Virus record (IMG/VR): IMGVR_UViG_3300008261_000001
Coordinates: 1-64,000 of that record
Length of the DNA stretch: 64,000 bases
Reading direction: 5' to 3' (one strand)
A program made the position numbers and the translations under genes. How positions within the stretch are numbered: the stretch's first letter is position 1; every line of letters begins with the position of its first letter. Shown here in pieces: positions 24,224 through 60,200 of the stretch. The notes below the pieces were generated by a model. The model ran no database searches. It worked only from the letters and a program-made list of their open reading frames with translations, and was not told where the DNA came from.

Positions 24224-24252
24224 CTAATAAGAGCGACCCACACTTGGGATAA
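24224..24252 (-). promoter_or_regulatory. Promoter-like cassette TTATCC-N17-TATTAG
   Basis: Conserved boxes with 17-nt spacer; points into ORF 24186. Confidence 0.75.
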
Positions 24253-24394
24253 TAATAAATGAATAAAATAGATCTGTGTTTACTGATGGGGAGCTTTTAC
24301 ACGCTCCTATTAACAAATGGAAACCCAAACAAGACACCTGTGTTTCTTGCTGTGACAAGTACCTTGTTTTTCTTCACTTGGTTGTTCGGTGAGC

Positions 24395-25339
24395 TTATCC
24401 AATAGCCGTGTACTTCTCTTCTCCTGTGGGTGCATCGTCCACGAGGGACTTGTAGTAAGAGTCTTTTGTTGTTAAACGGGGCTTAGAGAAATCTGGTGCT
24501 GTGGGCGTGTCTTCTAAGGGGAAGTAGAAGTTCAAGTCGATATTCGAGACTATCTTGGATAAGTGGTTCTCAGGTAGAGCCTCTGTAGGGTCGTAGTCTG
24601 GGTAATACAGTGTTACGCCTTGTATGGCTGTCTTGAGTATCTCGTCACGCTCTAGGAGCAGTTGCTCCCTCAAGTCGCACAGCTTGAGGATCCTCCCTTC
24701 CAAGTTATTCCTCAGTTGAGAGATTTCTTGGGTTATCCATTTTCTAGCCTCTGTGGTGATGTTTCCAATCTCGTCTGCTCTGGGGTAGATGTTTTGGTTA
24801 TTCCCACCGAGCTTGCGGGCAGGGTATCTCCAAAGGGGAAGCCAACCTGCGGTTTCAACCCCTTTAAAGTCCTCTTCTTTCTGTGGGAGTTGTGCCACCA
24901 CGCCTCCATAGGGCTGAGAGGGATTCAAGATGGTTTGATCTTCAAGCACGACAGAGCCGTTGGGTATATCCAATAGCTCATAGGAGTCTGGCTGTAAGAA
25001 CATGGATATATCGAAGGGGTTTCCACCTTGAGCGATGTAAGCCATAATGAGCTTCCCCAACGACGACGAGGCATCTACCTCTAGTCCTATGCGTCTTTCG
25101 GTGACTTGTAAGAACTGAGGGCTGATGTCCCAAGCACCTGAATCACGAGCTTGTTTGATGGCATCAGGTATCTGAGCCTCGTTGGGCTTGTGATAAAGCA
25201 CCTTTACATTTCCGATATTGGATAACTCCGAGTTAATAACCCTTATGCGTGAGTCCACATTTTTGCGTTGGAGTAGGGCAAATCTTCTGAACTCCAACCA
25301 TGCCCCCCTACGAAACATACAGTTCCAACCGAAGCTCAT
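24395..25339 (-). CDS. Hypothetical protein, probable virion component
   Basis: 314 aa; last gene of a tightly coupled leftward operon. Confidence 0.7.
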   Translation of the reverse strand: MSFGWNCMFRRGAWLEFRRFALLQRKNVDSRIRVINSELSNIGNVKVLYHKPNEAQIPDAIKQARDSGAWDISPQFLQVTERRIGLEVDASSSLGKLIMAYIAQGGNPFDISMFLQPDSYELLDIPNGSVVLEDQTILNPSQPYGGVVAQLPQKEEDFKGVETAGWLPLWRYPARKLGGNNQNIYPRADEIGNITTEARKWITQEISQLRNNLEGRILKLCDLREQLLLERDEILKTAIQGVTLYYPDYDPTEALPENHLSKIVSNIDLNFYFPLEDTPTAPDFSKPRLTTKDSYYKSLVDDAPTGEEKYTAIG

Positions 25340-28000: not shown

Positions 28001-31000
28001 CTAGCGGTTCGTCAGACTCTTTAGTGCAAATAGATCAGGCTTCGGATAAACCGAGCTTTCCATTTTAGCCAAAGTCCCTTGAGTCCGATGTGTCCTCGTT
28101 TTAATCCAAGCCATTCGTGACTCCCTCGCCTGTAAAACACCCAACCCATCATCCAAGTCACTCGGCAAACCTGAGCCCAACTCCCCATAACCCTCCGTTA
28201 TTAAAACAGAGTCCTCTATCACAACACGCCTGTCCAAGACACTTAAACAGGTGTTTGTGTTCACAAAAGGCTTTGAGCTTGTTAAGCCCTTAATGTTGTC
28301 CAACAACAACTCATTAGACGGATGTGTAGGATCCCCCTCACCCACAAGGCTCATGTAATCGTCTGCCTCATAGTCTGCCCAACTGACCATGTCCGTAGGA
28401 AACGACATAAACCTACGCACACGCTCAGACCAAGATAGTGTCCTCTCCCGATAAAATAAGAAGTCTTCAGCTACGCTCTGCACCAACCCATTTTTCATCC
28501 GAACTATCCGATACGAGAAGGGATGTACGCTATCGGTAGTCGTCGAATAAGTGCCTCCCTCCACCCCTGAGGTCACCCTTAAGGGATTTCCTAAATCTCC
28601 ACCAACACTAGGCAAGAGGTTGTAGGTGGACTTATCCTTAGTCCCTACACTACCGCTTACTATGAGGTAATCAAGTCCAACCTCTAGAACACGATACGAA
28701 CCTCTGTTGTCGTCCAACTCATGTGGCTCACCCTCTATGTACCCAACCTCACCTAGCTTGCCCTGATCCCCACGCGGTGGATACCCATACTCTACAGGTG
28801 AACTATCCAATAACGCCCCTTGTGGATCTATCACAAGGTAATCACCCACAAGGACACCAAGATCTAAGAAGTCTGCATTGGTATCCACGAGCTTACCCTC
28901 TAGAGGAACGGATATGCCCTCTTGTGCAGGAGACTCGTAAAGCACCTCAAACCCCTGTGAGAAGTACTCATCAAACGACTGCAACTGAGGAATAAGCCCA
29001 CCCACCCTTGTCTTAATCCTAAAGCTGTAAGCCTCCGCGATAGATGAACCCCTTACCCAACTACAAGTCAACTCCCCATCCACAACCCCCACAACCCTCA
29101 AGTACAACGCCTCTGTTCCGTCCTCCTTGTGGATAAACACATGGTCTCCCATCTGCACCACATTAGAGAAGTTTCCAATTTGGGTATCCGTCCCATCGGT
29201 GTCTTCTTCAATCAGATAGTTCACTTGCTTGGGAGTTAGGACATACACGCCCTCGCCCTCGTCTGTAAGATTTAACACCAAGCCCTCTCTCCCCTCATAA
29301 ACATAACGCAAAGAGGAGACACCCTCAACCACACCCTTTAGGACATCGGTGAACCTACGAGGTCTCCTAGCCACCAACTGCACCCTCTCTGTGAAATCCC
29401 ATGCGGGTAAATCCGATAGGGTGTAATCTATGGGGCTTCTTACATTACTACTGCCGTCTCCAAATACACTCTTGGTTGAATAGTCTCTCACCAACAGCGG
29501 AAAAGACTTATCCAAGTATATTCCACCTAAGACCGTCACGCTCATGGATAATACATCTAGGGGCAATAAGAACCCCTCCCCATAAGAGTTAACATCGGTG
29601 ACTTCACCTAAAGAACCCCACTCTATTCCGTAAACGACTCCGTCTGTACCCCTAAGAGCCGTAAGAGATGACGAGGTATCCCCTCCACCAGCTACACCAA
29701 GTGTAAACTGAATACTTCCACTTAAAGTACAAGGAGCTTCGCTAGGCACAAGGGAGGTCTTAACAAGGTCGAACTTAGCCCTTGTCCCACCTGTAATCAC
29801 TTGCCCATACGCCTCACCCAATATGTCGCTCAGTTCACTGAAGTCCACGACCGTCCCATCTAAATACGCCACGGAGCCATCTACAAAACTAAAGCTCGTC
29901 TCTGTCCTTGAGGCATAAGATATCCGTAGGGCTGATCGACCATAGACGGAGTCGTACACACCCAAAGTCGTAGACATGGGTCTAGATGAAACCCCCACTG
30001 AGTCTAAAATAACAATCAAGTCCCCAACAGAACCAAAGAAAGAGGACAACTCGGTGTTGTCTGTACTCAGTGTGGCTGAGATACCCAATACGCTTAAACC
30101 TGTCACCTTAGGGAATGAAATAACAACAGACTGACTCTGTGTCACAATCTCTCTAATCTCTTCGTCTGCGACACCCTCCGTGTAAAACTCCACTCGGTGA
30201 AGTCCAGAGTTATGCCCAGAGCTAACAACTAAGAAATCTCCCTTCAGAATATTATCCGCAGGTAAAGAGAGATTATGGATAACACCAGATAGGTTATCCG
30301 TAGAGCCCCCACTCAACACCAAGCCCATGTCCCCCTCACCGACATAGATAACACCTTGTTCGTTGACCTCCGACCCTACCATAATGGATAAACCGACCCC
30401 ACTCAAAGCAACCGAGTTTTCACCGCTTGAGCGATATCCGTAGATTAATAACCCATCGGATAAGATTTCTTTAATCTCAAAGGCTGAACCCCCATTTATG
30501 ACGGACGAGTTATTCACATCGGAAGATACGATGTGAGTACCACCCCCACCACCTACGGACTCATAAACAAGAAAACCGCTGTCCAAAACCTCAACCGAGG
30601 ACGAGTAGCTACCTTGTACCTCATAAGAGTCAAATAATGGATAACTCTCCCTAATAGAGACACGATCCGATGGGATATAAGCCGATGGGGATTGGGCTGT
30701 ATAGCCCAAGTGGAAATCCATAAACCAAGCCGAACCCACACCTGTGTAGATGGTCGTACCGCTTGTGGTGGTTAAGCCACCCAAGCCCCCCCAAAATGAG
30801 GAAGCTCTGAATAACCAAGTCTCACCCGTAAAGGCAGGAGCAGGTGGGACATTGGGATTATCTATGGGTGAGTCCACGATGGTGAGCGTGTTGCCCACAT
30901 AGGTGAAGGAAGTCATGTTGTCTGGTGAGTACGCCACATAACCAAAGCCAAACCTTTGGAAACTCACCGTCCAATCTGTCACGCCCCTTGTAAAAGTAAA

Positions 31001-34000
31001 CCGACCATATCGGATTAACCCTCCGTTCAAGTACACATCTAGCCGTATCTCGTTACCTGTGCTACCCTCGCCCGCAAGGTAGTCGAAATAAAGGAAATAA
31101 TCTCTGTACTTGGTGTTGGAAAACACGAGTTCTACAGTCGATACATCGTACTTGCCAGAGCTAGGGATACCCTCGCTCAAGGTCTCCGTTACGCTCACAC
31201 CGACCGCGTCATCGGATAAGTGATAAACGAGAGCGTTATTGACTCTGTAAGAGAGAGAACCACCCGAGTTCGAGGCGGAGAACCTCGGTGGCATGATTTC
31301 AGTTCCGTTTATCCAACCCAACTCCAGAAGCCTGTCCTCGAACACCATGAGGTCTGATTGTCTAGGTGTTTGTACACACTCACCAATCGCTGTGGCTACA
31401 GAGTAGTCATATGTTGTGACAAGGACACCATCCACGCCCTCTACGCCATCGTCCCTAACCTCATCTGGATAAACATATTCAAGGCTCCCATTGTTGTCTG
31501 CTTGTGCTGTAAGTCTCTCTAAATAGGGAGGAACCGTGACGAGAATATCCTTTTCTGTTAAGGGCTTCTTAAAGGGTATAGACTCGTCTCCGTCGTCGTT
31601 TACACCCAATCCCATGAGTGCTGGATACACATAAGGTTCCAAGCTAGTGTTTCCAAAAGTAACCGACCCCTCAAGAGCCGTGTGTGCCGAGGGGACATTT
31701 TGACCTAAGATTTCTTTAATAGGATAGTTAGGGTCAGACCCACTTGGCAAGGTTATGTCGAATATCTCACCCTCTGCCGACCTTAGTCCCACATCGACAC
31801 CCACACGATAAACACTGCTGTCTCCTTCTTCGTCCAAATCGAGGGCAAAGCTCTGAACAATCGTGTCTCCCCTCTTGGGGGCAAAAGCTGAACCAAAGGC
31901 TGTTATTAAGCTACCCTCCAAGACCACCACACACCCATTTACGATTTCTTTAATCCTCGCGTTCCGAGGTTCTCCAGTTAATGAAAACACAGAGTCATAG
32001 GCATACTCCCCCTCGTTCAATACGGGAGAGAAGCCAACACCATCAACACCCAACTGTAGCTTATCCCCCACACGCAACCCATTAAATACCCTTTCTAAAT
32101 TCCCCACCACCACATCGGATAAATCCCCACCCTCAGATAAGAACCTATCTGTTATTGGATAACCAGTAAGTGGGTCTATGGGAAACTCACTCAGTGGGAC
32201 AGCGGATAAGATGAGGCTAGGTCTTCCTACAGAGCTAGGAGCATATTCACTAAACCCATTAGGCGAATACGACACAACTCTGAACCTTGCTCCCCTCTTA
32301 GAGAGAGTTAAGCTGGATATGTTTTTTAATGAACCGAAAGCTGGGTTTTCTACGAGTGCTATGACATCCGTAAAAGTGCTCTCAAAGTCCCTAAAAAAGA
32401 ACAACTCCCCACCGCCTCGATAAGTCATCATCTTAGCCGACTGCGGATACAGCCTCGACTCTACACTCGGTTTCCACAAGGGCGAATAAATGGGAGCGTA
32501 CTCATACTTAATGAATGGATAACCCACACCCATGTCATAAGACATACGCTTTTCATAAGAAACCAAAGCGTAGTCGTCTATCTCGTTCTCTATGAGATTC
32601 CTCTGTGTAGATTTCTTCTTCTTAAAGTCCAAGACGCTCGATACACCCTCTGCATCTATCAAGTATCTTGGATAAATCTCCCTTGTGATGGGGTCTTCTA
32701 ATCCCGCACCACACCACTTGTCTCCCCTCAAAAGCTCGAACTTAAACAACCCATCCGCATCACCCACGACCTTGCCCGTTGTACTTGAGACAAGCTCGTC
32801 CACTGGCTTAATAAAACCATCGTATCTCTTTATCCAATTTCTAGCCACCACATCAGAGGCGAGAAGATCAAAATATCCAATAGACCTCCCTCGCTGAGTG
32901 TTTTCTGTCCGAGTTATCTTCGCCCCAAATCCCCTCTTGTCACTCACCTTGAGACTATCCAATAACTCTCTCTCTACCTCGCCTTCATAGGTTTGTTCAG
33001 CGACTGTTCTGAAGTAAAACACATCTGGGGCATACACCATGCACTTAGCGTAAATCTTCTTGCCCGTGTGCTCAGTCGGAACTCTCCTTTCCGTAAAACT
33101 TAACTCGTACTTCGGATACTCCACCTCGCCTGTGGCTAAAACCCTCTCACTGACCACCCCTTGTGCCGTATGCTTTAAGTAATAACTCTCACCCACAGAT
33201 ACGCCCAAACCACCCAACAAGTTTAACACATCCGAACTCAGAGCGTAGTCAACCCCCTCTACAAGCTCATAACCCAAACCCTCCGACTCCACATAACGGA
33301 TAAGAGTATAGCCCTTATCCGTTAAAACCTTGCTCGATAAAGCTAAAGATTTATCCCCCACTTTAAGCACAGCCCTCATCGACACCAATAACTCACTCAC
33401 ATTGTGTTCTGCCGTTTGCCCCCTCACTCCTAAAATAGTCACCCCATTAATCAAAGACACCGAAAGTACCTCGTAAGCAATACCTGCCAACATCAATAAA
33501 CCACCCACCTTAAATAAATCCCTCAAGTCACCCTCTACAGAAATCTCCCCACCACCCAAACGGCTCTTACAAACAACCCCACTTACGCTCTTGAAAACAT
33601 AACCAGATGCCCTCAAGACACTCACATCACTCGACTTTATCCCATACCTCGCAGGAGGATACACGGATAAGTTTCCATTAGAACCGACCGCAGTCACCCT
33701 AAAGATATGTCCAGATAGATTTAACAAATCATCTACAGCCACTAAACCACTCGGTATCCAACTCGAAATCGTACTGCTACCAATACTTATCTCTAAGTCC
33801 TCAACCTCTTTTATTCCAGTAGATACCCTAACCGAATACTCCCCACCCATAGACCTCGTCACATAATAACTAACACGCACATCCCCCACCGCGTTCACAT
33901 AAATAATCCTGTCACTCGTTATGCTCGCACCAGATGTGACAATAGATGCCCCGTCATACAAAGTAAATAAATCACTATCCAAGACCACCCCTCGCTCCAA

Positions 34001-38276: not shown

Positions 38277-38306
38277 CTAATAGACGAGCTTTGGGACTTG
38301 GGATAA
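38277..38306 (-). promoter_or_regulatory. Promoter-like cassette (18-nt spacer)
   Basis: TTATCC-N18-TATTAG; divergent pair with 38348. Confidence 0.75.
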
Positions 38307-38347: not shown

Positions 38348-38376
38348 TTATCCCAAATTGGAAAGTCCTTTATTAG
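38348..38376 (+). promoter_or_regulatory. Promoter-like cassette
   Basis: TTATCC-N17-TATTAG. Confidence 0.75.
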
Positions 38377-39233: not shown

Positions 39234-39262
39234 TTATCCCAAGTCCAAAGCTCGTCTATTAG
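39234..39262 (+). promoter_or_regulatory. Promoter-like cassette
   Basis: TTATCC-N17-TATTAG; near-identical inverted copy of the 38277 cassette. Confidence 0.75.
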
Positions 39263-40669: not shown

Positions 40670-40698
40670 TTATCCCAAGTTGTGTGTGGGCTTATTAG
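40670..40698 (+). promoter_or_regulatory. Promoter-like cassette
   Basis: TTATCC-N17-TATTAG. Confidence 0.75.
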
Positions 40699-48535: not shown

Positions 48536-48564
48536 CTAATAAGGGGCTTTTGAGCTTGGGATAA
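48536..48564 (-). promoter_or_regulatory. Promoter-like cassette
   Basis: TTATCC-N17-TATTAG. Confidence 0.75.
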
Positions 48565-48809: not shown

Positions 48810-48887
48810 GTGTAACTCCTTAGTAGGTTGTTCTGTCTCACGCTGTCCCCCTACTAATGAGGGGTGTTCTCTCTCGTCTAGGGGTTT

Positions 48888-49522: not shown

Positions 49523-49551
49523 CTAATAAAGGGTCTTAGAGCTTGGGATAA
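49523..49551 (-). promoter_or_regulatory. Promoter-like cassette
   Basis: TTATCC-N17-TATTAG; divergent pair with 49626. Confidence 0.75.
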
Positions 49552-49625: not shown

Positions 49626-49654
49626 TTATCCCAAGTGTGGGGGACGATTATTAG
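49626..49654 (+). promoter_or_regulatory. Promoter-like cassette
   Basis: TTATCC-N17-TATTAG. Confidence 0.75.
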
Positions 49655-50088: not shown

Positions 50089-50589
50089 CTAGCGTGAGTC
50101 GCCACTACCCTTGATGACACCGCGTGAGGATCTATCCAATAGCTTCTCGATGTTCTTCTCAGCCACTTCGGATAAGCTCACATCTAGCTCGTCCGCTATA
50201 CGAGCTATGTACCAGAGAACATCACCCACCTCGGATAAGAAATCTTTCTTCCACTCCGTAGAAAGGTCAAAGGCGGACTGATCACGGATAACCTTCTTGA
50301 TCTTACCTGCGACTTCACCTGCTTCGGAAGCAAGACCCAAAGCTAAATAAGTGATGGCTTGGTCTTTTGGATAGATAGCTGTAAGCCTCGTGGACTCTTG
50401 ATACTCGTTAAGGCGGGCGTTGTAACACACAACTGCCCCCTTATCCTCTAGGTACTTATCAATAATCTTGTCGTTTTCCTCTTGAGAGCGTCCAGGTAAC
50501 CCAAATAGACGGTTCATGTCCCCACGGGTGACTATAATAGGAAGCTCTATGCCCCCTACACGCTCTATGTACTCGTATCTCTTCTGCAT
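50089..50589 (-). CDS. mazG: MazG-like nucleotide pyrophosphohydrolase
   Basis: LGLASEAGEVAGKIKK...EVGDVLWY...NIEKL; AGGAG before ATG 50589. Confidence 0.93.
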   Translation of the reverse strand: MQKRYEYIERVGGIELPIIVTRGDMNRLFGLPGRSQEENDKIIDKYLEDKGAVVCYNARLNEYQESTRLTAIYPKDQAITYLALGLASEAGEVAGKIKKVIRDQSAFDLSTEWKKDFLSEVGDVLWYIARIADELDVSLSEVAEKNIEKLLDRSSRGVIKGSGDSR

Positions 50590-50643
50590 AGACAAACTCC
50601 TTCTGTAAGTCTGTGTCTGTGTTCCTTGTAAAGAAGCATACCT

Positions 50644-51287: not shown

Positions 51288-51599
51288 ATGAAGAACACCA
51301 TCTTGCTAGATGGAAAACGAGTGTGGAACTTCGACCCCCAATGGGTCGAAACTCTATCTGTCGAAGTGCTTTATTACTTGGTCTCTGAGACCCTCGGTGA
51401 ACTAGGCTTTGAACGGCTAAATAAATGTGTGTACTACAAGGACGGCATAACTATCTTCTGTGACTCAGAGAAGAAGACCTATGAGGTCGATATAACCATC
51501 AACGGCAAGATGATCACCTCTCACAGCTTCATGCACTTATGGGAGTCTATCCGTACACATTGGATAGTCACCCATCGACTTAGAGAACCCTCCGCTTAG
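51288..51599 (+). CDS. Small protein, paralog family A
   Basis: DGKRVW, LGELGF, LWESIRTHW. Confidence 0.75.
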   Translation: MKNTILLDGKRVWNFDPQWVETLSVEVLYYLVSETLGELGFERLNKCVYYKDGITIFCDSEKKTYEVDITINGKMITSHSFMHLWESIRTHWIVTHRLREPSA

Positions 51600-51958
51600 A
51601 TAGAACCCTCCTCAGCCTCTTCGTAGAGGCTATCGAGCAACTCCACCGCCTCATTAATCTGATCTATAAGGAGCGTCTTTGGGCGGTCTGGGTCGAGGAG
51701 GTCAAAACCCGCTGTGGGGCTGATGTACCCCTCTCCGTCAGGGGTCATCTTGAGATTGATGTTCAAGGGGTCATAGCCCTTGTCATAGCAGTCCGCACAG
51801 GTGTGGATGTCCACACAAGCTGGCTCGTAATGCGTCTGAGAGAGGTGGCGGATCTCACCGCCACGACCGTTACAAGTAAGGCATCTGTGGATGTAAGCGT
51901 CTGCGTGAGCGAGCTTGAGGTTCTTGATGGTGTTCTTGGTGGTCTCGATGGGGGTCAT
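51596..51958 (-). CDS. Zn-finger protein, paralog family B
   Basis: CLTCNGRGG, CADC, YDPLNINL, ISPTAGFDLLD. Confidence 0.8.
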   Translation of the reverse strand: MTPIETTKNTIKNLKLAHADAYIHRCLTCNGRGGEIRHLSQTHYEPACVDIHTCADCYDKGYDPLNINLKMTPDGEGYISPTAGFDLLDPDRPKTLLIDQINEAVELLDSLYEEAEEGSI

Positions 51959-51997: not shown

Positions 51998-52026
51998 CTA
52001 ATAGCCGAGCTTCGGACTTGGGATAA
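51998..52026 (-). promoter_or_regulatory. Promoter-like cassette
   Basis: TTATCC-N17-TATTAG; extended identity to the 38277 and 39234 copies. Confidence 0.75.
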
Positions 52027-52181: not shown

Positions 52182-52418
52182 TTAGTAGGGGAGGGACTGC
52201 CACCCCTTACCCACCTTCACCACATTTCCCACGAGGCCACGGAAGTGGGGGTTAGCGGGGAGTCCGAGGGGCAAGCCGTCCTCGTTGGCGAGGGTGGTGA
52301 TGCCTTTGACCTTCTCCACAATCTGCACATCGCCACCCACGGCTCTCTGAAGGTCGGTGAAGCTGTTAACCTCGATGTCGAGGATGTCTCCGTTGGTCTT
52401 GAACACTTGTGCCTTCAT
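52182..52418 (-). CDS. DUF3846-like small phage protein
   Basis: DLQRAVGGDVQIV...NEDGL..GLPAN...LVGNVV. Confidence 0.7.
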   Translation of the reverse strand: MKAQVFKTNGDILDIEVNSFTDLQRAVGGDVQIVEKVKGITTLANEDGLPLGLPANPHFRGLVGNVVKVGKGWQSLPY

Positions 52419-52467: not shown

Positions 52468-52496
52468 CTAATAAGGGGGATTGGGACTTGGGATAA
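52468..52496 (-). promoter_or_regulatory. Promoter-like cassette
   Basis: TTATCC-N17-TATTAG. Confidence 0.75.
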
Positions 52497-52907: not shown

Positions 52908-52936
52908 TTATCCCAACCCTCAGAACCCCTTATTAG
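52908..52936 (+). promoter_or_regulatory. Promoter-like cassette
   Basis: TTATCC-N17-TATTAG. Confidence 0.75.
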
Positions 52937-52972: not shown

Positions 52973-53284
52973 ATGAACAGCTTCAACAGCAACAGCTTTG
53001 TTACCATCAGCACCATCCTCACCAATAACAACACGCAGGACGACACCCTCTTGATGGTGAAGGAGTGGGCGGAGCTTATGCTCCTCCTCACGGGAGAGTG
53101 TCCTAACTATACGCCCACCCTCACCCATCTCCCCACCGCCTATGTGGAGGTGGGGAAGTTGCTCGATGAGCAACAAGCCCATCAGCTTGCCTTGTGGAAG
53201 GAGGAGGAGGCTTCTAATAAGGAAGCCTTGTGGCTTGAGGAGGTGGAGAACCGCCTAGAAGCTGGCGAGCGTGTGAGCTTCTAA
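52973..53284 (+). CDS. Small hypothetical protein
   Basis: AAGGAG RBS after cassette. Confidence 0.7.
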   Translation: MNSFNSNSFVTISTILTNNNTQDDTLLMVKEWAELMLLLTGECPNYTPTLTHLPTAYVEVGKLLDEQQAHQLALWKEEEASNKEALWLEEVENRLEAGERVSF

Positions 53285-53319: not shown

Positions 53320-53634
53320 ATGGCGATATACAGCTTCTTGACCGAAGAAGGAAAGAGGGAGTGGACAGCCCACGCCACCTCATGCTTTTGGTTCGACAAC
53401 ACGGAGGACGGAAAGAGGGCGAATCTAGAGCTTGCCTTCAACGCTCTGATAGAGGCTGGGTTCAACGCCCAAAATGGTCTATTGGTTAAGGGGGGTATGT
53501 CCATCAAGCTGTCCGACTATGGGCTACAAATAAATACGGCTGGTGGTACGGCAGGTAGAAAGCTGAACATTTCCACCATGTGGAAGGACATAAGGGATGC
53601 TTGGGACTTATTGATGCCTCCCCCTAAGGGTTAG
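53320..53634 (+). CDS. Small protein, paralog family A
   Basis: EGKREW, LIEAGF, MWKDIRDAW. Confidence 0.75.
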   Translation: MAIYSFLTEEGKREWTAHATSCFWFDNTEDGKRANLELAFNALIEAGFNAQNGLLVKGGMSIKLSDYGLQINTAGGTAGRKLNISTMWKDIRDAWDLLMPPPKG

Positions 53635-53695
53635 GGGGGTTAAGGGCTAGAGGGTAAGGGGCTAGTGGGTAAGGGGCTAGAGGGTAAGGCTAGAG
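53628..53695. repeat. About 15-bp G-rich tandem repeat GGGTAAGGGGCTAG(A/T) x~4
   Basis: Between convergent stop codons. Confidence 0.9.
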
Positions 53696-54366
53696 ATGAA
53701 GGCGTTCATCTGAGAGACTGCATCTTCGGATAACAGATACTCCCTAGCATAGACGCTATCGCTCTGATCTTGTCGATTGGATAAATCATCTCCGACTTCG
53801 CTTTTAAGGTTGGAGGTCTTTTGCCAAACAAACCGAGAGTCCACCGAGGTCTCAAAGCCTATCCAAGAGAACATCTCTAGTAGGTGAGAAGAGACTTGTT
53901 GAGCATGAGCGTTATGCCCAGAGACGATTACACCGCACTTCTTTCCGTCTAAGGGGTTTTGTTCTCCATAGACGGATTTCCTATTCTCTAGGGTGTTGAG
54001 TCGCTCGATGATTTTTTGCAGTAGTGCCGAGTGGGATCCCCAACGAACGCTTGTGGAGAACAACACCGCGTCCGCCCAAGCGATGCCGTCATAAATAACG
54101 GGCATTTCATCTACTCCCCCATAAGCCTTTGGGTTTTCAGCGGAGAGCTTATGAGCCCAACAGCGATATTGACCTGCATCGAACGAAGCACAGTTGAACT
54201 TTCCGTCCGCATAACAGCTTAGGTTATCCACAATGTGGAGGTCGTTTGCGTTGATGTATCTTATCTCATGCCCTAGAGCTTTAAGCTCTTGTAAGGCGTA
54301 GGACAAGAAAGCACGGCTAGTAGATTTCTTAGCGTGTGTGGTCGTACTGATAGCTAGGATGTTCAT
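53677..54366 (-). CDS. Flavodoxin-fold NAD(P)H-dependent FMN reductase / iron-sulfur flavoprotein-like
   Basis: ILAISTT, Cys cluster CY...C...CW, DEMPVIY...ADAVLFSTSVRWGSHSALLQKIIERL, GKKCGVIVSG. Confidence 0.88.
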   Translation of the reverse strand: MNILAISTTTHAKKSTSRAFLSYALQELKALGHEIRYINANDLHIVDNLSCYADGKFNCASFDAGQYRCWAHKLSAENPKAYGGVDEMPVIYDGIAWADAVLFSTSVRWGSHSALLQKIIERLNTLENRKSVYGEQNPLDGKKCGVIVSGHNAHAQQVSSHLLEMFSWIGFETSVDSRFVWQKTSNLKSEVGDDLSNRQDQSDSVYAREYLLSEDAVSQMNAFISSLTL

Positions 54367-54739: not shown

Positions 54740-54768
54740 TTATCCCAAGTCCGAAATCAGCTTATTAG
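54740..54768 (+). promoter_or_regulatory. Promoter-like cassette
   Basis: TTATCC-N17-TATTAG. Confidence 0.75.
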
Positions 54769-54815: not shown

Positions 54816-55082
54816 ATGTTTCAAGCCCTACCCGACACAGCTATGATTTACCTCAATGGCGACGCTCTGGAGGTGGTTATCCTCCACAGCAAGACCTCCC
54901 ACGCAGTCCTCAAGGCGGCGGCTGATCACTCTGGGTGTAAGCTGGAGTACACGGGACTCCATAATGGAGAGGGGGGGAGCTTCGACCCCTACCTTGTGTA
55001 CCACCCCACGGAGGGGCGGAAGGGTGTGGAGAAGTTCATCAAGGAGCTTCCCCCTAGCCATGTGGTGATTGTTTACCGCTAA
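54816..55082 (+). CDS. Small hypothetical protein, paralog of 51010..51261
   Basis: AAGGAG RBS; shared motifs. Confidence 0.75.
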   Translation: MFQALPDTAMIYLNGDALEVVILHSKTSHAVLKAAADHSGCKLEYTGLHNGEGGSFDPYLVYHPTEGRKGVEKFIKELPPSHVVIVYR

Positions 55083-55269: not shown

Positions 55270-56553
55270 CTAGGAGGGGATCTTCACACCTAGACGATAG
55301 TATCTATTCTGAAGTGATAGGGGGCGTATGCCGAACCTCTTGGCTAGGGGGATTAAGTCTTTCTTTCTGGTGTTCTCGTCTACTAGGGACAGAAACTCTT
55401 CCCTAGTCATGTTTTGATACTCTTGTGTACCTCTGTTGGTGAGAGACTTCCACATCTTCTTACGGAGGAGTTTAATGTAGAGGGACATGGGCTTTATCCC
55501 CATACCCTCGGCTACATTTTTAAGAGACTCCATAGAGTCTATGTCCTTGATAACCTCGTTTAGCTTCTCATTGTCGTGTTTAATCTTCTCTTTCTTCCAC
55601 CCCTTATTTCGAGCTATAGTCCTCAAAATCCCTTCGCTCACCAACCACTCCTCTGAAAGCTCTTCGAAGGTCTTACCCCCCAATAATGCCTCGATGATCT
55701 TATCCCCATAAATATCCTCGGCCTGCTCCAACAGCTTAGGCTTAACCTTACGCTTGAGATTGGAGATCTTACCCCCTAAACCTTGCTTAACGAGGGACAG
55801 TCGCACTCCCTCCCGTGTTAAACCCACTTGGTCTCCAATCTCTTGCAAGGTCTGACCCTCTGCCCTCAGCATTGCAATCTGCTTGTCCACTGGACTTATG
55901 TTCACTCGGGACTTCAAGGTCAAATCGTTTGCCTTTAATACCCTCTGCAACCTTTGATAGTTATACCCCATTAAATCCGCTAACTCCCCCCTCCTCATCC
56001 CTTGCTCTATACCACCCTTGATCTTATCCAATTCTTCTCCACTAAGGATATAACCCTTTGCCTTGACGGTTAAACCCTTATTATCCATATAACGCCTCAC
56101 CGACCAAGCCGACCTCCCCACAACCTTAGACAACTCATGATACCCAAGCCCATCAGCTATGCCCTTATCCAATAACTTCCTCTCGGACACGGAAAACTTG
56201 TCCACATCCATAGAGAACTTATCCAACAAGCTCTTTATCCTCGGATAAGAGCAACCCATATGCACCATCAGCTCCGTAGTGTCCTTACCCTCGTCTATAC
56301 CCGCTTGAAGACGAGTCCTCACCGCATTCTCCCCACCCATAGCCGCAATCCACCTCGTTAAAGAAGCATGAGATAACGACTTCATTAAAGAAGGATTCAA
56401 CTTAAGATCCAACTCCCTCAGCCATATGTAAAAAGTCGAGACCGACACCCCCAACTCCGTAGCACACTCCGCAACAGATAAACCACGAGCGATAACCTGA
56501 GCTATCTTTGCCTTGTTCGGCACTATACGCTTCCTGCCCATATGCTCTCTCAC
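55270..56553 (-). CDS. Multi-HTH DNA-binding protein (about 7-8 HTH-like units) with a sigma-70 region-4-like HTH
   Basis: SVAECATELGVSVST, GYHELSKVVGRS, RRGELADLMG, TLQEIGDQVGLTREGVR, TFEELSEEW, SLKNVAEGMG; paralog of 40943..41776. Confidence 0.8.
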   Translation of the reverse strand: MREHMGRKRIVPNKAKIAQVIARGLSVAECATELGVSVSTFYIWLRELDLKLNPSLMKSLSHASLTRWIAAMGGENAVRTRLQAGIDEGKDTTELMVHMGCSYPRIKSLLDKFSMDVDKFSVSERKLLDKGIADGLGYHELSKVVGRSAWSVRRYMDNKGLTVKAKGYILSGEELDKIKGGIEQGMRRGELADLMGYNYQRLQRVLKANDLTLKSRVNISPVDKQIAMLRAEGQTLQEIGDQVGLTREGVRLSLVKQGLGGKISNLKRKVKPKLLEQAEDIYGDKIIEALLGGKTFEELSEEWLVSEGILRTIARNKGWKKEKIKHDNEKLNEVIKDIDSMESLKNVAEGMGIKPMSLYIKLLRKKMWKSLTNRGTQEYQNMTREEFLSLVDENTRKKDLIPLAKRFGIRPLSLQNRYYRLGVKIPS

Positions 56554-56629
56554 TCTCTCCCCCCAACATTAGGGGGGTTCTAGGTGTCCTTTTTTACTTA
56601 TACAAAACCTCTCGGTCTTGTCAAAAAAC

Positions 56630-57433
56630 TTAGTGATCGTTAGCTTCGATTCCGGTCTTGGACTTAAGGAGCTTCTCAAGGTGTGAAACCACCTTGAGGG
56701 CTACCTCCTCGCCATCTGCCGCTGAAACTCCGTTGGGCAGATCTGTGCCGTCTAGTCCAAGACCGATGCCCACGAGCTTGATGCCCTCAGCTTGAGCTTG
56801 TAGGCGTAGGCTCTCTAAATATCTCTTGGTGTTACACTGACCATCGGTCAGGAAGAAGGCTATCTTATGCGTTGCATCTATCTGTCGAGCGAGGTCGAGG
56901 GCGGCCTCGGCATAACAGATCAAGTCCGTCCCACCTGTCGGATGACTATCCTTCATTTTCTTGAAGTGGTCGGGAGACCACTTCTCATGTGGCCACTTCG
57001 CCACGGCTACGATGGGAGAGTTAGCCGAGCTTGCACCTGTGGGTGCGTTGAAGTGGTACTCGTAAAAGCACCCAGCCACTGCCGTTTTAACACCTATCCT
57101 CTGACACCCATCTGCGAGGGCATCTATGAGGAGACAACACTCGTTCCACCACTTGGTGGTTTTACCTGTAGCTGTCTGTTGGGTGTAGTTCATGGAGTCT
57201 GACATATCGACCACGAAGCTAAACCCAGCGGACACCTCGGGAGAGGAAAAGATCCGCTCATAGCGGTCTTTGTTAACATAACCCGCGTTCACCGCCACCA
57301 CGCTCCGCGTGAGAGCGGAGCGGTTCAGACGGACACCGATGGGGCGGAGCCCTACGGCTTGGTTTGCCACCTCTAGCTGACGACGAATCTTGTTCAAACC
57401 ACCTTGTATGGACGACTTAATCTTCTGAGTCAT
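56630..57433 (-). CDS. von Willebrand factor A (MIDAS) domain protein
   Basis: FVVDMSDSM, PTGGT, FFLTDG; GAGGAG before ATG 57433. Confidence 0.9.
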   Translation of the reverse strand: MTQKIKSSIQGGLNKIRRQLEVANQAVGLRPIGVRLNRSALTRSVVAVNAGYVNKDRYERIFSSPEVSAGFSFVVDMSDSMNYTQQTATGKTTKWWNECCLLIDALADGCQRIGVKTAVAGCFYEYHFNAPTGASSANSPIVAVAKWPHEKWSPDHFKKMKDSHPTGGTDLICYAEAALDLARQIDATHKIAFFLTDGQCNTKRYLESLRLQAQAEGIKLVGIGLGLDGTDLPNGVSAADGEEVALKVVSHLEKLLKSKTGIEANDH

Positions 57434-57468: not shown

Positions 57469-57497
57469 ATAATGAGGAGATTTTCAACTTGGGATAA
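57469..57497 (-). promoter_or_regulatory. Promoter-like cassette (CATTAT variant)
   Basis: TTATCC-N17-CATTAT between the zincin-like and vWA genes. Confidence 0.65.
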
Positions 57498-57503
57498 CTT
57501 TTC

Positions 57504-58712
57504 TTACCTTTTTGAACCCCCCTTGCTGGGCTTGAACATAGAGCGATATATGGGCTTATGTCCATTCGGCACATAGAGGGCGTGATCGAGGTTCTTTGTG
57601 TTTTTCTCTACATCCTGTTGCATAGCCGACGAGGGGTCTAGAGCCTTACCCTCCCCCTTTAAGATTTTCTCCAAGTCCTCCAACTTGATGCCCTTTTTGC
57701 CCCCTACACGGCTCTTCTCGTCTGAGGGGTCTACCTCAGACGAGTCTCCATCTGCGGAGCCTTCACCACCCTCTGAGGGGTCTCCCTTACCCTTACCCTT
57801 ACCCTCTGAGGGATCTCCCTCTCCAGGCTCCCCCTCCCCCTTGCCCTTCGCCTCAAGGCCCTCACCATCCTCCAACTTCTCCTTTAAGAGATCGTGGAGC
57901 TTATTGATGATTTGGATAGCGACCACGAGGGGAAGATGTGCGGTCTCCTCCCACCGCGTATGGGTGGGCTTGAGGGTCTTCCATACGGGCTTTAAGGTCT
58001 CCACAAGCAGTCGAGCCTCCTCACAATACTCCTCATAGACCTTGAGGGCTTTCTCGTTCCTCCACCCCTTACCACTATCCCTCAGAGCCATCATAAAGTC
58101 TGAGGGGACACCTTGACCACGAACATCCGCCTCAAGTCCAAACACCCAATCTTGAACACTATAGAAGCGTCCCTCGGTGTCGGGATACAATAGAGCCATC
58201 CCTGGCTCAAGCCTCATATCTGCTGTGACATTCGCCCACTTTTTCATGTTCGCTTCCCCATAGGGGACAGACTGATCAAGGTGTGGAACAATCTTACTCT
58301 CGAACTCCTTGAAGGTGGGAAAGGGCATCGATGCCCTATCACAGATGCCATGTCCCGCCTCGTGGACACCACCCCCCACCCCCGCTGAGGCAGTGATGGT
58401 GCTGGCAGAAGAAGCAGAGGGAGAGGGCAGATAAAGCGTGACCCCTACGGGAGCGTTGGTGTACTGATTGTTTGCCTCGTGATAGATGGCGTCCAACCAC
58501 CGCCCCCTATTTGCATTTATCCGAAGACCCTCGACCCACTCAGAGGAGAGGGCGTTGGCGAAGCTCAACCACGGAAACTTAGCAGATATGCCGAAGGTGT
58601 TGCCCGCACGGACGACTTTTACATCTCCCACATCGGTGGGGAAAAATGCGGTCAAGCCCTTAAAGGCTCCCTCGCAGAACTTCAAGGGGTCTTTGGTGTA
58701 GTCAATGCTCAT
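57504..58712 (-). CDS. Zincin-like (HExxH) protein with Gly/Glu linker, resembling the N-terminal half of MoxR-partner vWA proteins
   Basis: VHEAGH; N..ADMRLE; GEGEPGEGDPSEG linker; between AAA+ and vWA genes. Confidence 0.7.
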   Translation of the reverse strand: MSIDYTKDPLKFCEGAFKGLTAFFPTDVGDVKVVRAGNTFGISAKFPWLSFANALSSEWVEGLRINANRGRWLDAIYHEANNQYTNAPVGVTLYLPSPSASSASTITASAGVGGGVHEAGHGICDRASMPFPTFKEFESKIVPHLDQSVPYGEANMKKWANVTADMRLEPGMALLYPDTEGRFYSVQDWVFGLEADVRGQGVPSDFMMALRDSGKGWRNEKALKVYEEYCEEARLLVETLKPVWKTLKPTHTRWEETAHLPLVVAIQIINKLHDLLKEKLEDGEGLEAKGKGEGEPGEGDPSEGKGKGKGDPSEGGEGSADGDSSEVDPSDEKSRVGGKKGIKLEDLEKILKGEGKALDPSSAMQQDVEKNTKNLDHALYVPNGHKPIYRSMFKPSKGGSKR

Positions 58713-58755: not shown

Positions 58756-58783
58756 CTAATAAGCTCCCCCAGAGCTTGGGATA
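58756..58783 (-). promoter_or_regulatory. Promoter-like cassette (16-nt spacer)
   Basis: Divergent pair with 58859. Confidence 0.7.
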
Positions 58784-58858
58784 ATCTTTTTCAAAAAAAG
58801 ACACCCACCCCCCCTCGTCTGTCCGCGTATGTATAAGCCACAAAAAAACCGAAAAAGA

Positions 58859-58887
58859 TTATCCCAACCCAGAAACTCCCTTATTAG
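58859..58887 (+). promoter_or_regulatory. Promoter-like cassette
   Basis: TTATCC-N17-TATTAG. Confidence 0.75.
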
Positions 58888-58931: not shown

Positions 58932-60059
58932 ATGCGGAAGCCCGCCTCCATCACCAAGCTCTTCACCACCACCTTCAACGGCATCACCCGCCCTCGCTCC
59001 CCCCTCACCGAGATCGAGATCTTGAACGCTGGGTTCGACCCAGCCAACCGCCCTGACGGGTATGTCGAGGGTGAGGATTGGATGGTGGATCTTTCCATTG
59101 TGCTCCCCCTCGGACACACCATCGTGCAGGGTCCAGCAGGTAACGGCAAGGACATCTTCGCCCTCGCCTACGCTCACGCTCACAACCTCCCCCTCAAGGC
59201 TTTCGCCTTCAAAGAGGGGGCAAACCCCCTCGATTGGATTAAGAGGGCAGAGCTTGAGGCAACCCCTCAAGGTGGCACTAAGACCTCTTATGTAGAGGGA
59301 GACCTCGTCAAAGCCTGCAAAGGGGTCACCATCAAGAGGGACTTCACCACCATGTCCTCTGACCTCCGCTCGGCTGTCAAAGCAGACATGGAGAAGCAAG
59401 AGTGGACGGTCACGGATAAGAACGGAATATTCACCATCACCGTCCCCGCACTTATCCTGTTCTCAGACTATGATCGTGCTACGCCCGACCAAGTAGAGGT
59501 TCTTCGCCAAGCCCTAGAGCTTGGGAAGGAGAGGCTCGCTGACCCCATCAGCGGAGAGCTGTTCCCCATCGCAAAGGGGACACGCTTTATCTTCACCGCC
59601 AACAGCGGTGCTGATGGTGATGGGGGTCGTGGCATGATCACACGCCCAAAGGACGCCTCTATCCTAAACCGTTGTCAGGGCATCTACGCCCCCCCTCCCT
59701 CAGCCAAGTTCGAGAGGAAGGTCGTTCAAGCCTCGTACCCATCTCTCACAGAGGAGGAGGTCAAGCTCCTTGTGGATTGCAATAGGGCTATCCGCAAGGT
59801 GGCGGAGGAGCAAGCTATGGGCATCGAGGTCTCTCTCCGCACAGCCCTCGCTTGGGCTAAGGCAACCCTCCGCTATAAAGAGGTTATGCCTAACCTCGAC
59901 TTCAAGAAGGCTATGAAGAAGAGCTTCGTTATCGTAAAGGGACACCTCAGCGAGGCTCACAACCACCAAGCTCTAGAGGGAGCTATTGACCCCCTCCTCC
60001 GCTCCGATGTTGTAGATAGCACCACCACAAACCCTAATGTATGCCCTATTGATATGTAA
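58932..60059 (+). CDS. MoxR/CbbQ/NorQ-type AAA+ ATPase
   Basis: QGPAGNGKD, ILFSDYDRA, FIFTANS, SILNRC; AAGGA before ATG 58932. Confidence 0.88.
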   Translation: MRKPASITKLFTTTFNGITRPRSPLTEIEILNAGFDPANRPDGYVEGEDWMVDLSIVLPLGHTIVQGPAGNGKDIFALAYAHAHNLPLKAFAFKEGANPLDWIKRAELEATPQGGTKTSYVEGDLVKACKGVTIKRDFTTMSSDLRSAVKADMEKQEWTVTDKNGIFTITVPALILFSDYDRATPDQVEVLRQALELGKERLADPISGELFPIAKGTRFIFTANSGADGDGGRGMITRPKDASILNRCQGIYAPPPSAKFERKVVQASYPSLTEEEVKLLVDCNRAIRKVAEEQAMGIEVSLRTALAWAKATLRYKEVMPNLDFKKAMKKSFVIVKGHLSEAHNHQALEGAIDPLLRSDVVDSTTTNPNVCPIDM

Positions 60060-60171
60060 GGGGTAGGTGGAGTAGGGGTAGGGGTCAAAGTCGCTTAAAA
60101 TAGCCCTTTAAACGCTTATAGCGTAAATACGATAAGAAGCTGATTCTCTAGTTTAAAACTTTTAATAAAAG

Positions 60172-60200
60172 TTATCCCAAGTTCCAAACCCACTTATTAG
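60172..60200 (+). promoter_or_regulatory. Promoter-like cassette
   Basis: TTATCC-N17-TATTAG. Confidence 0.75.

What the first reader, a model, noticed from the sequence alone, without database searches (positions are those of the whole stretch)
24224..60200. Sixteen copies of a non-canonical promoter cassette TTATCC-N17-TATTAG organise the accessory genome
Seen at 24224-, 38277-, 38348+, 39234+, 40670+, 48536-, 49523-, 49626+, 51998-, 52468-, 52908+, 54740+, 57469-, 58756-, 58859+ and 60172+ (degenerate copy at 48854-). The spacer is 17 nt in 14 copies, 16 and 18 once each. Most copies have an upstream A/T tract, CAA after the first box, a G-run after the second, then a T-poor leader (GACAGCGAGAGAGAC-like) and an RBS; every copy points into an ORF, three times as divergent pairs. 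Established: the geometry is sigma-70-like but neither box is TTGACA/TATAAT; T4-type phages have mobile promoter cassettes that shuffle small genes. Inference: an early promoter for a phage or unusual host sigma factor that also serves as the recombination unit of a gene-cassette array.
Basis: partly seen in the sequence, partly recalled or inferred. Interest (0 to 1): 0.75.

Follow-up and report, generated by a model that had tools for sequence, protein, structure and literature searches.

The report
Phage-specific promoter cassettes, freshwater jumbo phage
The repeated TTATCCCAA-N14-TATTAG element is a real, phage-specific promoter placed in front of about 30 genes of an uncultured 290-kb freshwater jumbo phage; it is probably read by the host RNA polymerase carrying a small sigma factor that the phage itself encodes, which makes it a new example of a known kind of phage gene control rather than a new mechanism.

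Summary
There are 15 exact TTATCC-N16-18-TATTAG copies in the window (0.03 expected), plus a weaker copy at 57469- and a copy at 48854- that keeps only the second box. Genome-wide there are about 30-32 copies. All are intergenic, and each sits 33-86 nt upstream of a ribosome-binding site and start codon on the same strand.

The window is the first 64 kb of a 290-kb jumbo myovirus. I found no RNA polymerase gene. The phage has three promoter classes: this two-block class 1, an abundant TTTAT(A/G) class 2 before replication and virion genes, and a canonical TGGTATAAGGG extended -10 before the tRNA genes.

The nearest relative keeps the motif as GTATCCCAA-N14-TATTAG, at four orthologous genes among others. 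More distant relatives carry different motifs before orthologous genes. This pattern tracks a phage-encoded 207-aa two-domain (ECF-like) sigma factor, whose gene has a conserved TTGACA-type -35 hexamer upstream. I infer that host sigma drives the phage sigma, which drives class 1.

The "early" timing is untested. The recombination-unit idea has circumstantial support only: cassette segments shared before unrelated genes, ORFan modules bracketed by copies, and homology blocks ending at the motif in a sister clade. I rate it a new variant of known kinds (phage sigma regulons and T4-type PeSL cassettes).

The parts
24224..24252 (-). class-1 promoter, leads to ORF 23947-24186 (79 aa)
38277..38306 (-). 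class-1 promoter with an 18-nt spacer; half of a divergent pair; leads to ORF 37968-38204
38348..38376 (+). class-1 promoter; half of a divergent pair; leads to ORF 38463-38696
39234..39262 (+). class-1 promoter, leads to ORF 39298-39648; shares 24 or more nt beyond the boxes with 38277- and 51998-
40670..40698 (+). class-1 promoter, leads to ORF 40744-40935 and then to the HTH protein 40943-41776
48536..48564 (-). class-1 promoter with an upstream G/C stem-loop, leads to ORF 48079-48480
48854..48859 (-). degenerate copy: CATTAG, G-run and typical leader, but no first box; leads to ORF 48606-48809
49523..49551 (-). class-1 promoter; divergent pair that shares a central hairpin; leads to ORF 49178-49471
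49626..49654 (+). class-1 promoter, leads to ORF 49709-50026; 32 nt of its leader are identical to the copy at 167721+
51998..52026 (-). class-1 promoter, leads to ORF 51596-51958 (120 aa, conserved in relatives)
52468..52496 (-). class-1 promoter, leads to ORF 52182-52418 (DUF3846); the -10 box lies in the loop of a 6-7 bp inverted repeat
52908..52936 (+). class-1 promoter, leads to ORFs 52973-53284 and 53320-53634
54740..54768 (+). class-1 promoter, leads to ORF 54816-55082
57469..57497 (-). class-1 promoter with a weaker second box (CATTAT), leads to ORF 56630-57433 (267 aa, conserved)
58756..58784 (-). class-1 promoter; divergent pair; leads to ORF 57504-58712 (402 aa, conserved)
58859..58887 (+). 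class-1 promoter; divergent pair; leads to ORF 58932-60059 (AAA_5 ATPase, conserved); 27 nt of its leader are shared with the copy at 128475-
60172..60200 (+). class-1 promoter, leads to ORFs 60253-61041 and 61059-61694

Best explanation
The element is a phage-specific promoter class ('class 1') of an uncultured 290-kb freshwater jumbo myovirus that has no RNA polymerase of its own.

Each copy consists of an A/T tract, a -35-like box TTATCCCAA, a -10-like box TATTAG exactly 14 nt further on, a G-run, and a T-poor, A/C-rich untranslated leader ending in a ribosome-binding site.

I infer that the host core RNA polymerase reads these sites when it carries a phage-encoded specificity factor. The most likely factor is the 207-aa two-domain (sigma2 + sigma4, ECF-like) sigma factor encoded at genome positions 270,787-271,410. 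The gene for that sigma appears to be started by the host's own sigma, because a TTGACA-type -35 hexamer is conserved upstream of it in four diverged relatives.

Class 1 then switches on about 30 transcription units. Half of them lie in the hypervariable 38-61 kb block of small ORFans. The rest are scattered and include a DNA ligase and an AAA ATPase.

What is shown: the anatomy, placement and orientation of the sites; their conservation and replacement among relatives; the existence and fold of the sigma factor.

The repeated promoter and leader segments also look like junctions at which gene cassettes have been exchanged, as in T4-type PeSLs. This is circumstantial.
For: Promoter anatomy and statistics.

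No RNA polymerase: Pfam beta, beta-prime, T7-like and YonO-type models find nothing (the T7-like model also rang in no control genome, so one search carries little weight). PHROGs scans of every ORF over 450 aa, with Pfam added for four of those without a match, also find nothing.

The host-type specificity seems canonical. All seven tRNA transcription units carry TGGTATAA(G)GG. Class 1 does not match this, and sigma-70-like sites are depleted in the region.

The motif is clade-specific:
- No exact copy occurs in nine relatives, and only five single, chance-level hits occur in all of IMG/VR.
- The closest relative (about 70% nt identity) has GTATCCCAA-N14-TATTAG at 9 sites. Four of them stand before orthologues of the genes at 203958, 216871, 272063 and 278530; there the boxes are kept while the spacers have diverged.
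- G005/G008/G009 carry TGTAACCCCTTATCTATA-N3-TAGTGT instead (62 copies in G005), and G001 carries CCCCC-N7-8-ATTTGATAAGTA. Both stand before orthologues of class-1 genes.

The 207-aa protein is a sigma factor:
- Sigma70_r2 at 17.5 bits.
- PHROG 1740 'sigma factor', E = 3e-6.
- A C-terminal sigma4-like helix-turn-helix in the alignment.
- A PDB sequence hit to a sigma-H factor.
- An AF2 model with two helical domains.
- Foldseek top hits that are almost all ECF or SigH-type sigmas, probability 0.97-1.0.

Its divergence parallels the motif: 75% identity with G006 (same motif) and 51% with G005 and G001 (different motifs), with substitutions in the sigma4 recognition helix.

The other sigma-like protein (189 aa, two sigma4-like HTH domains) has recognition helices that are nearly unchanged across subclades, and class-2-like TTTATA words occur in all subclades. 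That protein therefore fits the conserved class better than the variable one.

TTGAC(A/T) lies upstream of the sigma gene in G000, G006, G005 and G001, although that hexamer is under-represented in G000 (123 against 283 expected).

General knowledge: jumbo phages that lack an RNA polymerase often encode sigma homologues thought to direct the host polymerase to phage-specific promoters (PMC13282480).
Against: - No transcription start sites or timing data exist.
- The sigma-motif covariation rests on only three subclades.
- The boxes do not resemble known ECF promoters (no GGAAC/CGT).
- The sigma gene's putative host promoter has a poor -10 (AATAAC).
- The class-1 second box plus G-run (TATTAG-GGG) resembles the tRNA and HNH-gene promoters (TATAAG-GG). 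This could mean that the host sigma reads the -10 of both and only the -35 box needs a phage factor.
- An ECF-like sigma driving small host-takeover-type ORFans would make them middle rather than early genes, which is unusual.
- The structure model is of only moderate confidence (pLDDT 65).
- The protein-DNA complex prediction was not run by the tool.
Confidence: 0.5

Rival explanations
1. Sigma appropriation, as at T4 middle promoters. The host primary sigma reads the -10 (TATTAG followed by GGG). A phage-encoded activator, or a replacement for sigma region 4, binds the 9-bp TTATCCCAA box that occupies -35 to -27.
For: - The -10 and discriminator resemble those of promoters that look host-type in this genome: TGGTATAAGGG before the tRNA genes and TTGACA-N16-TATAAG before the HNH gene.
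- The first box is 9-10 bp long and nearly invariant, more like an activator site than a sigma4 hexamer.
- A copy without the first box keeps the -10, G-run and leader.
- The genome encodes several HTH or sigma4-like proteins.
Against: - No MotA or AsiA homologue was identified; I did not search for them specifically.
- The conserved double-sigma4 protein does not vary with the motif.
- In G005 and G001 the whole promoter differs, not just the upstream box.
Confidence: 0.22
2. These are true early promoters read by unmodified host holoenzyme, in a host whose primary sigma has an unusual preference. The motif differences between relatives would then reflect different hosts.
For: - The geometry is sigma-70-like: 17-bp spacing, an UP-like A/T tract and a GGG discriminator.
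- The sites precede small ORFans in a hyperplastic region, as early promoters do in T4 and SPO1 (PMC2839356).
- Relatives differ in GC content (38-47%) and in which restriction sites they avoid, suggesting different hosts.
Against: - tRNA genes in the same genome use a canonical extended -10, and the sigma gene has a canonical TTGACA, so the host sigma looks ordinary.
- The most conserved position of bacterial -10 elements (T at -7) is G here.
- Primary-sigma specificity is highly conserved among bacteria (general knowledge).
- The host is unknown; the SOD gene gave no clue.
Confidence: 0.15
3. These are promoters for an unrecognised phage RNA polymerase, perhaps carried in the virion. Such an enzyme might recognise a DNA hairpin, as the N4 virion polymerase does.
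For: - The information content is very high, as in single-polymerase promoters.
- In 12 of 30 copies the -10 box lies in the loop of an inverted repeat, and the arm sequences differ between copies while staying complementary.
- Several giant ORFs have no annotation.
Against: - No polymerase signature was found by four Pfam models or by motif searches.
- The 2898-aa ORF next to the cluster is a G/V/S/L-rich, structural-looking protein.
- The hairpin is absent from more than half the copies.
- The two-block geometry and A/T tract fit a bacterial holoenzyme.
Confidence: 0.06

Closest known systems
PeSL cassettes (promoter-early stem-loop) of T4-type phages (PMC2839356, PMC4122927)
   Same: - Repeated promoter cassettes with an upstream A/T-rich tract, concentrated in hyperplastic regions in front of small ORFans.
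- Some copies have G/C-rich stem-loops.
- Cassette segments are shared before unrelated genes.
- ORFan modules are bracketed by copies.
- Homology blocks between relatives end at the motif.
   Different: - PeSL promoters match the host sigma-70 consensus; these do not.
- A stem-loop is significant in only 8 of 30 copies.
- There is no demonstration of recombination products or mini-circles.
- The phage is not T4-like.
Phage-encoded sigma factor regulons, such as SPO1 gp28 and gp33/34 and the sigma homologues of jumbo phages that lack an RNA polymerase (PMC13401047, PMC13282480)
   Same: Host core polymerase is redirected by a small phage sigma to a phage-specific, non-canonical two-block promoter set. 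The sigma gene itself appears to be host-transcribed.
   Different: - The link between this sigma and this motif is inferred, not shown.
- The consensus TTATCCCAA-N14-TATTAG is not one I know from any described phage sigma.
- The regulon is rich in accessory ORFans rather than classical middle genes.
T4 middle promoters (MotA box plus a sigma-70 -10; PMC2988021)
   Same: A 9-10 bp box occupies roughly -35 to -26 in place of a canonical -35 hexamer, at fixed spacing from a -10-like element.
   Different: The sequence is different, no MotA or AsiA homologue was identified, and the -10 lacks T at -7.
ECF (group 4) sigma promoters
   Same: The candidate reader has the two-domain sigma2-sigma4 architecture. 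The promoter is two-block, has high information content and a fixed spacing.
   Different: There is no GGAAC-type -35 or CGT-type -10, no anti-sigma partner was identified, and no copy of the motif lies upstream of the sigma gene (no autoregulation).

Membership tests
Bacterial sigma-70-family two-block promoter | Two conserved blocks at a fixed spacing of about 17 bp, upstream of a gene and oriented toward it | tested here: met
   Spacer is 17 nt in all but two copies (18 nt). All 30 copies lie 33-86 nt upstream of an RBS and start codon on the same strand.
Bacterial sigma-70-family two-block promoter | Blocks match TTGACA / TATAAT (housekeeping sigma) | tested here: not met
   TTATCC matches 3 of 6 and TATTAG 4 of 6, with G at -7. 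The consensus scan finds fewer sigma-70-like sites than shuffles do.
Bacterial sigma-70-family two-block promoter | Transcription starts 5-9 nt downstream of the -10 element | not testable with these tools
   Only one metatranscriptome contig was found, and it lies inside a gene (59201-59816).
PeSL mobile regulatory cassette (T4-type) | Strong promoter identical to the host sigma-70 consensus | tested here: not met
   definition from PMC2839356.
PeSL mobile regulatory cassette (T4-type) | AT-rich tract upstream of the -35 element | tested here: met
   The upstream 40 nt are 62% A+T, with A and T runs in the consensus.
PeSL mobile regulatory cassette (T4-type) | Adjacent stable stem-loop (polyG/polyC) that acts as a terminator | tested here: inconclusive
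   8 of 30 copies have an upstream structure with z below -2, for example at 48564-, 49551-/49626+ and 52026-. Terminator-like sites are not enriched in the region (25 against 18.7 expected).
PeSL mobile regulatory cassette (T4-type) | Concentrated in hyperplastic regions next to ORFans | tested here: met
   16 of about 32 copies lie in 38-61 kb, where most genes have no homologue in six relatives.
PeSL mobile regulatory cassette (T4-type) | Indels and replacements between close relatives have their end points in the motif; recombination products (mini-circles) exist | tested here: inconclusive
   G009 against G005: 13 of 208 homology-block ends lie within 10 nt of their motif (1.3 expected at random), including a swapped cassette pair. 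A gene-start control predicts a similar number. For G000 against G006, 2 ends lie at the motif. Strains at 99.6-100% identity show no indels. Mini-circles are not testable here.
ECF-type sigma regulon | A two-domain (sigma2 + sigma4) sigma factor is encoded | tested here: met
ECF-type sigma regulon | Promoter with an AAC-containing -35 (GGAAC-like) and a CGT-like -10; autoregulated sigma operon with an anti-sigma | tested here: not met
   The consensus differs. No class-1 copy lies upstream of the sigma gene. No anti-sigma was identified.
N4-type hairpin promoter / virion RNA polymerase | A single-subunit virion RNA polymerase is encoded | tested here: inconclusive
   PF00940 finds nothing in six frames, but the model rang in none of the 14 control genomes and the tool warns this does not show absence. 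No polymerase motifs were found in large ORFs. PHROGs (with Pfam on four of them) on all large ORFs found nothing.
N4-type hairpin promoter / virion RNA polymerase | A conserved DNA hairpin at the promoter | tested here: inconclusive
   An inverted repeat around the -10 box has z below -2 in 12 of 30 copies, with arms that vary but stay complementary.

The most novel reading that the evidence does not exclude
The phage lineage carries private, co-diversifying sigma-promoter pairs. Each subclade would have re-tuned its ECF-like sigma together with the 30-60 promoters of one largely conserved regulon (TTATCCCAA-N14-TATTAG, TGTAACCCCTTATCTATA-N3-TAGTGT, CCCCC-N7-8-ATTTGATAAGTA). The repeated promoters would double as the junctions at which ORFan cassettes are swapped. 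The 438-copy word TATCCAWT, found only in the subclade that uses the TATCCCAA box, might be a genome-wide binding word for the same sigma4 domain or a related factor.
Probability: 0.25. Interest if true: 0.65.

Novelty: new variant of a known kind. Interest (0 to 1): 0.48.

Why it matters
- It gives a testable transcription programme for a cosmopolitan, uncultured freshwater jumbo phage. Near-identical copies occur in lake metagenomes from many studies. The programme has three promoter classes and a likely master-switch sigma.
- If the sigma-promoter link holds, the clade offers natural orthogonal sigma-promoter pairs and a clear case of a whole regulon changing its promoter motif.
- It would extend the PeSL idea of promoter-flanked ORFan cassettes beyond T4-like phages and beyond host-consensus promoters.
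- It does not reveal a new mechanism of transcription.

Tried and rejected
- **Phage RNA polymerase.** Searched with Pfam PF00562, PF00623, PF00940 and PF05183 in six frames, PHROGs on all ORFs over 450 aa, plus Pfam on four without a match, and catalytic-motif regexes. Nothing was found (PF00940 rang in no control genome either, so that search is weak). The 2898-aa ORF beside the cluster looks structural.
- **Host identification.** The SOD gene's best bacterial matches are 35-44% identical and taxonomically scattered. The nearest cultured phage is very distant (Tunturiibacter phage, about 30% aa identity). HIP1 is absent.
- **RNA evidence.** Two run searches and one read-laying run gave a single contig inside a gene.
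- **Closer relatives covering 21-62 kb.** None was found in IMG/VR, using the AAA ATPase alone, its alignment, or the N-terminus of the 2898-aa protein.
- **Exact-protein look-up.** This found only the same strain, 99.6-100% identical, so no indel test was possible in this phage.
- **Sigma-DNA complex prediction.** The tool did not fold it, so it gives no evidence either way.
- **Canonical sigma-70 promoters as the early class.** Only a handful of plausible sites exist.
- **The double-sigma4 189-aa protein as reader.** Unlikely, because its recognition helices do not vary with the motif.
- **A second class linked to AACCC.** A first attempt to define it led nowhere before TTTAT(A/G) emerged.
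Full report
**What the window is**

The window is bases 1-64,000 of a 290,179-bp IMG/VR virus record, estimated 93% complete. PHROGs and Pfam annotation shows a myovirus. It has a tail sheath, baseplate wedge, portal, large terminase, prohead protease and tail fibres. It also has a DnaB-like helicase, other helicases, a family-A-type DNA polymerase, ribonucleotide reductase and 13 tRNA genes.

No cultured phage is close. The best match is an uncultured 485-kb phage, and next is a Tunturiibacter phage at about 30% amino-acid identity. Near-identical DNA occurs in about 20 freshwater metagenome runs from many studies. Assemblies found by exact protein look-up are 99.6-100% identical over up to 20 kb.

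**The observation**

The pattern TTATCC-N16-18-TATTAG has 15 exact matches in the window against 0.03 expected, and 18 in the whole genome. A position weight matrix trained on the copies gives a bimodal score distribution: 28-30 sites are far above background, and shuffled sequence gives none. A relaxed regular expression plus a requirement for a downstream ORF gives 30 sites. Two further TCATCCCAA variants bring the total to about 32.

Every site is intergenic. Every site points at a ribosome-binding site and start codon 33-86 nt past the second box. The real consensus is an A/T tract, then TTATCCCAA(g), N13, (c)T, TATTAG, then (t)GGGG. Leaders are 39% A, 35% C and only 8.5% T.

No copy has a 16-nt spacer, and 57469- has CATTAT as its second box. 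The copy at 48854- keeps only the second box, the G-run and the leader.

**Other promoter-like classes in the same genome**

- About 70 genes are preceded by TTTAT(A/G) 30-60 nt before the start, often with TAA(T)AG a few bases upstream. I call this 'class 2'. The genes include the DNA polymerase, helicases, and genes around the portal, the tail sheath and the giant virion proteins.
- All seven tRNA transcription units are preceded by TGGTATAA(G)GG, a canonical extended -10.
- Sigma-70-like TTGACA-N17-TATAAT sites are depleted in 37-57 kb (8 against 19 ± 4) and are rare genome-wide.

The polymerase acting on this genome therefore seems to include an ordinary housekeeping specificity, and class 1 does not fit it.

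**Who could read class 1**

No multisubunit, T7-like or YonO-like RNA polymerase was detected (though the T7-like model rang in no control genome, so one search is weak), and no large ORF shows polymerase motifs. Two sigma-related proteins exist.

The 207-aa protein at 270,787-271,410 has these properties:
- A weak Sigma70_r2 hit.
- A PHROG 'sigma factor' hit.
- A C-terminal sigma4-like helix-turn-helix.
- A PDB sequence hit to a sigma-H factor.
- An AlphaFold model with two helical domains joined by a disordered linker, pLDDT 65.
- Foldseek matches that are almost exclusively ECF or SigH-type sigma factors aligned over both domains, probability 0.97-1.0.

The 189-aa protein at 111,423-111,992 consists of two tandem sigma4-like HTH domains. 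Its recognition helices are almost invariant across all relatives.

**Comparative evidence**

The helicase gene retrieved 32 related IMG/VR contigs, and I fetched six of them.

- None of the nine relatives searched has the exact motif. The extended motif occurs only as five single hits in all of IMG/VR.
- The closest relative (G006/G007, about 70% nucleotide identity) carries GTATCCCAA-N14-TATTAG at nine sites. Four of them stand before orthologues of the G000 genes at 203958, 216871, 272063 and 278530. The boxes are conserved and the spacers have diverged.
- A second subclade (G005/G008/G009, about 54% protein identity) has TGTAACCCCTTATCTATA-N3-TAGTGT instead. G005 has 62 copies, 25 of them in the equivalent hyperplastic region.
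- A third subclade (G001) has CCCCC-N7-8-ATTTGATAAGTA.
- Both of these motifs stand before orthologues of G000 class-1 genes, such as the divergent 402-aa/AAA-ATPase pair.

The regulon is therefore at least partly conserved while its motif has been replaced.

Class-2-like TTTATA words are present in all subclades. The 207-aa sigma is 75% identical between the two genomes that share the motif. It is 51% identical to the genomes with other motifs, with substitutions in the sigma4 recognition helix. The double-sigma4 protein does not vary in this way.

A TTGAC(A/T) hexamer lies upstream of the sigma gene in all four subclades examined. This holds even though that hexamer is less than half as frequent as expected in G000.

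From this I infer a cascade: host sigma drives the phage sigma, which drives class 1. The inference rests on three subclades and has no biochemical support. The complex-prediction tool did not fold the sigma-DNA pair.

**A serious rival**

The class-1 second box plus G-run (TATTAG-GGG) resembles the -10 and discriminator of the host-type promoters in this genome. Those are TATAAG-GG at the tRNA genes and TTGACA-N16-TATAAG before the HNH/HTH gene at 56597-56624. This is what a T4-middle-promoter-like arrangement would look like: the host sigma reads the -10, and a phage factor binds a box that replaces the -35. I cannot separate the two models with sequence alone. Both require a phage-encoded, subclade-specific factor.

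**The cassette and recombination idea**

Within G000, only one pair of the 30 downstream proteins is paralogous. Yet several cassettes share 24-44 nt beyond the functional boxes:
- 38306-, 39234+ and 52026-
- 49626+ and 167721+ (32 identical leader bases)
- 58859+ and 128475- (27 bases)
- 52496- and 164718-
- 128475- and 128517+

So promoter and leader segments have been copied, or homogenised, independently of the genes they precede.

In G006, two trios of ORFans without G000 homologues are bracketed by class-1 copies (11184/12379 and 80477/81645). One G000-G006 rearrangement begins 7 nt before the box at 272063.

In the sister pair G009/G005 (84% identity), 13 of 208 homology-block ends lie within 10 nt of their own motif (1.3 expected at random, maximum 6 in 300 trials). 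Eleven of these are at the motif in both genomes. They include two adjacent promoter-led cassettes in swapped order and an inversion at a divergent pair.

A control that places points at the usual promoter distance upstream of gene starts predicts a similar count. The data are therefore consistent with recombination at the motif but do not prove it.

Upstream stem-loops like those of T4 PeSLs are significant in only 8 of 30 copies. An inverted repeat that puts the -10 box in a loop is significant in 12 of 30.

**Comparison with known systems**

The closest known systems are:
- T4-type PeSL cassettes (PMC2839356, PMC4122927).
- Phage sigma regulons, such as those of SPO1 and of jumbo phages that lack an RNA polymerase (PMC13401047, PMC13282480).
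- T4 middle promoters (PMC2988021).

The element works like these, but it fails the defining PeSL feature of a host-consensus promoter, and it does not match ECF promoter consensus.

**Verdict**

This is a real, well-defined, phage-specific promoter class and a new variant of known kinds. 'Early' timing and 'recombination unit' remain inferences. Interest is moderate.

Noticed in passing
whole genome, including the window (for example 5785, 46131, 48480-48490); also G006/G007: The octamer TATCCAWT occurs 438 times in 290 kb (about 22 expected). Copies are evenly spread, lie on both strands, are mostly inside genes and favour particular reading frames. TTATCC alone occurs 860 times (156 expected). 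The enrichment is shared only with the closest relative (1.5 per kb) and is absent from G001, G005, G008 and G009 (0.04-0.08 per kb). It therefore co-occurs with the TATCCCAA promoter box, which it resembles; it also resembles a DnaA box (TTATCCACA). No downstream -10-like element accompanies it.
   Followed up: partly
whole genome and all fetched relatives: GCGC is completely absent from G000 and from all six relatives. ACGT is absent from G000, G005, G006, G007 and G008 and nearly so from G009 (2 copies). GGCC, CCGG and AATT are strongly depleted in G000. This is extreme avoidance of 4-bp palindromes, presumably restriction sites, and the patterns differ between subclades.
   Followed up: partly
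window 21507-21575 and 21950-22021; also genome 149.8, 150.4, 159.6 and 224.6 kb: A second repeated cassette: a class-2 TTTATA box followed by a highly conserved leader of about 55 nt (CTCCGAGATAGGGGATAGGTT..AACCCTTAACCCAACCCCTATCTCGGAGTAA). Its ends are complementary and would enclose the ribosome-binding site in a hairpin.
   Followed up: no
genome 183125, 184933, 186195, 186895-, 196531, 232928-, 233364- (outside the window): All seven tRNA transcription units are preceded by TGGTATAA(G)GG, a canonical extended -10, 15-25 nt before the mature tRNA 5' end. The word TGGTATA is otherwise under-represented.
   Followed up: yes
window 55270-56624: A 427-aa HNH/HTH protein that looks like a homing endonuclease is unique to this phage. 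It carries its own near-canonical promoter, TTGACA-N16-TATAAG (56597-56624, minus strand), inside the accessory block. A second multi-HTH protein at 40943-41776 is also unique.
   Followed up: partly
window 28001-36697 (minus strand): A 2898-aa ORF has no family match. It is 13% Gly, 11% Val, 11% Ser and 11% Leu, which causes the extreme GC skew (-0.6) of 32-38 kb. It is conserved at 35-38% identity in relatives and always lies next to the hyperplastic promoter-rich region.
   Followed up: partly
window 38200-38460 and 62050-62400: There are short tandem direct repeats in the leaders of the divergent pair 38277-/38348+ (CCTAACCCACTCG x2; CACAGATACCAACCCA x2). A repeat-rich non-coding stretch lies at about 62.05-62.4 kb (TATAGACCC.../GGGCATAAGGTGTATT repeats), seen.
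   Followed up: no
window 45499-46107, 50089-50595, 53677-54366: The accessory block contains auxiliary genes: an Fe/Mn superoxide dismutase, a MazG-like pyrophosphatase and an NADPH-dependent FMN reductase. The SOD gene is also present in G005 and G009 (66-68% identity), and its best bacterial matches are only 35-44% identical.
   Followed up: partly
whole record: The phage is nearly clonal across lakes. About 20 metagenome runs from at least 16 studies hold 57-99% of the 31-mers of 48-58 kb. Independent assemblies are 99.6-100% identical over up to 20 kb, with no gene-content differences.
   Followed up: partly
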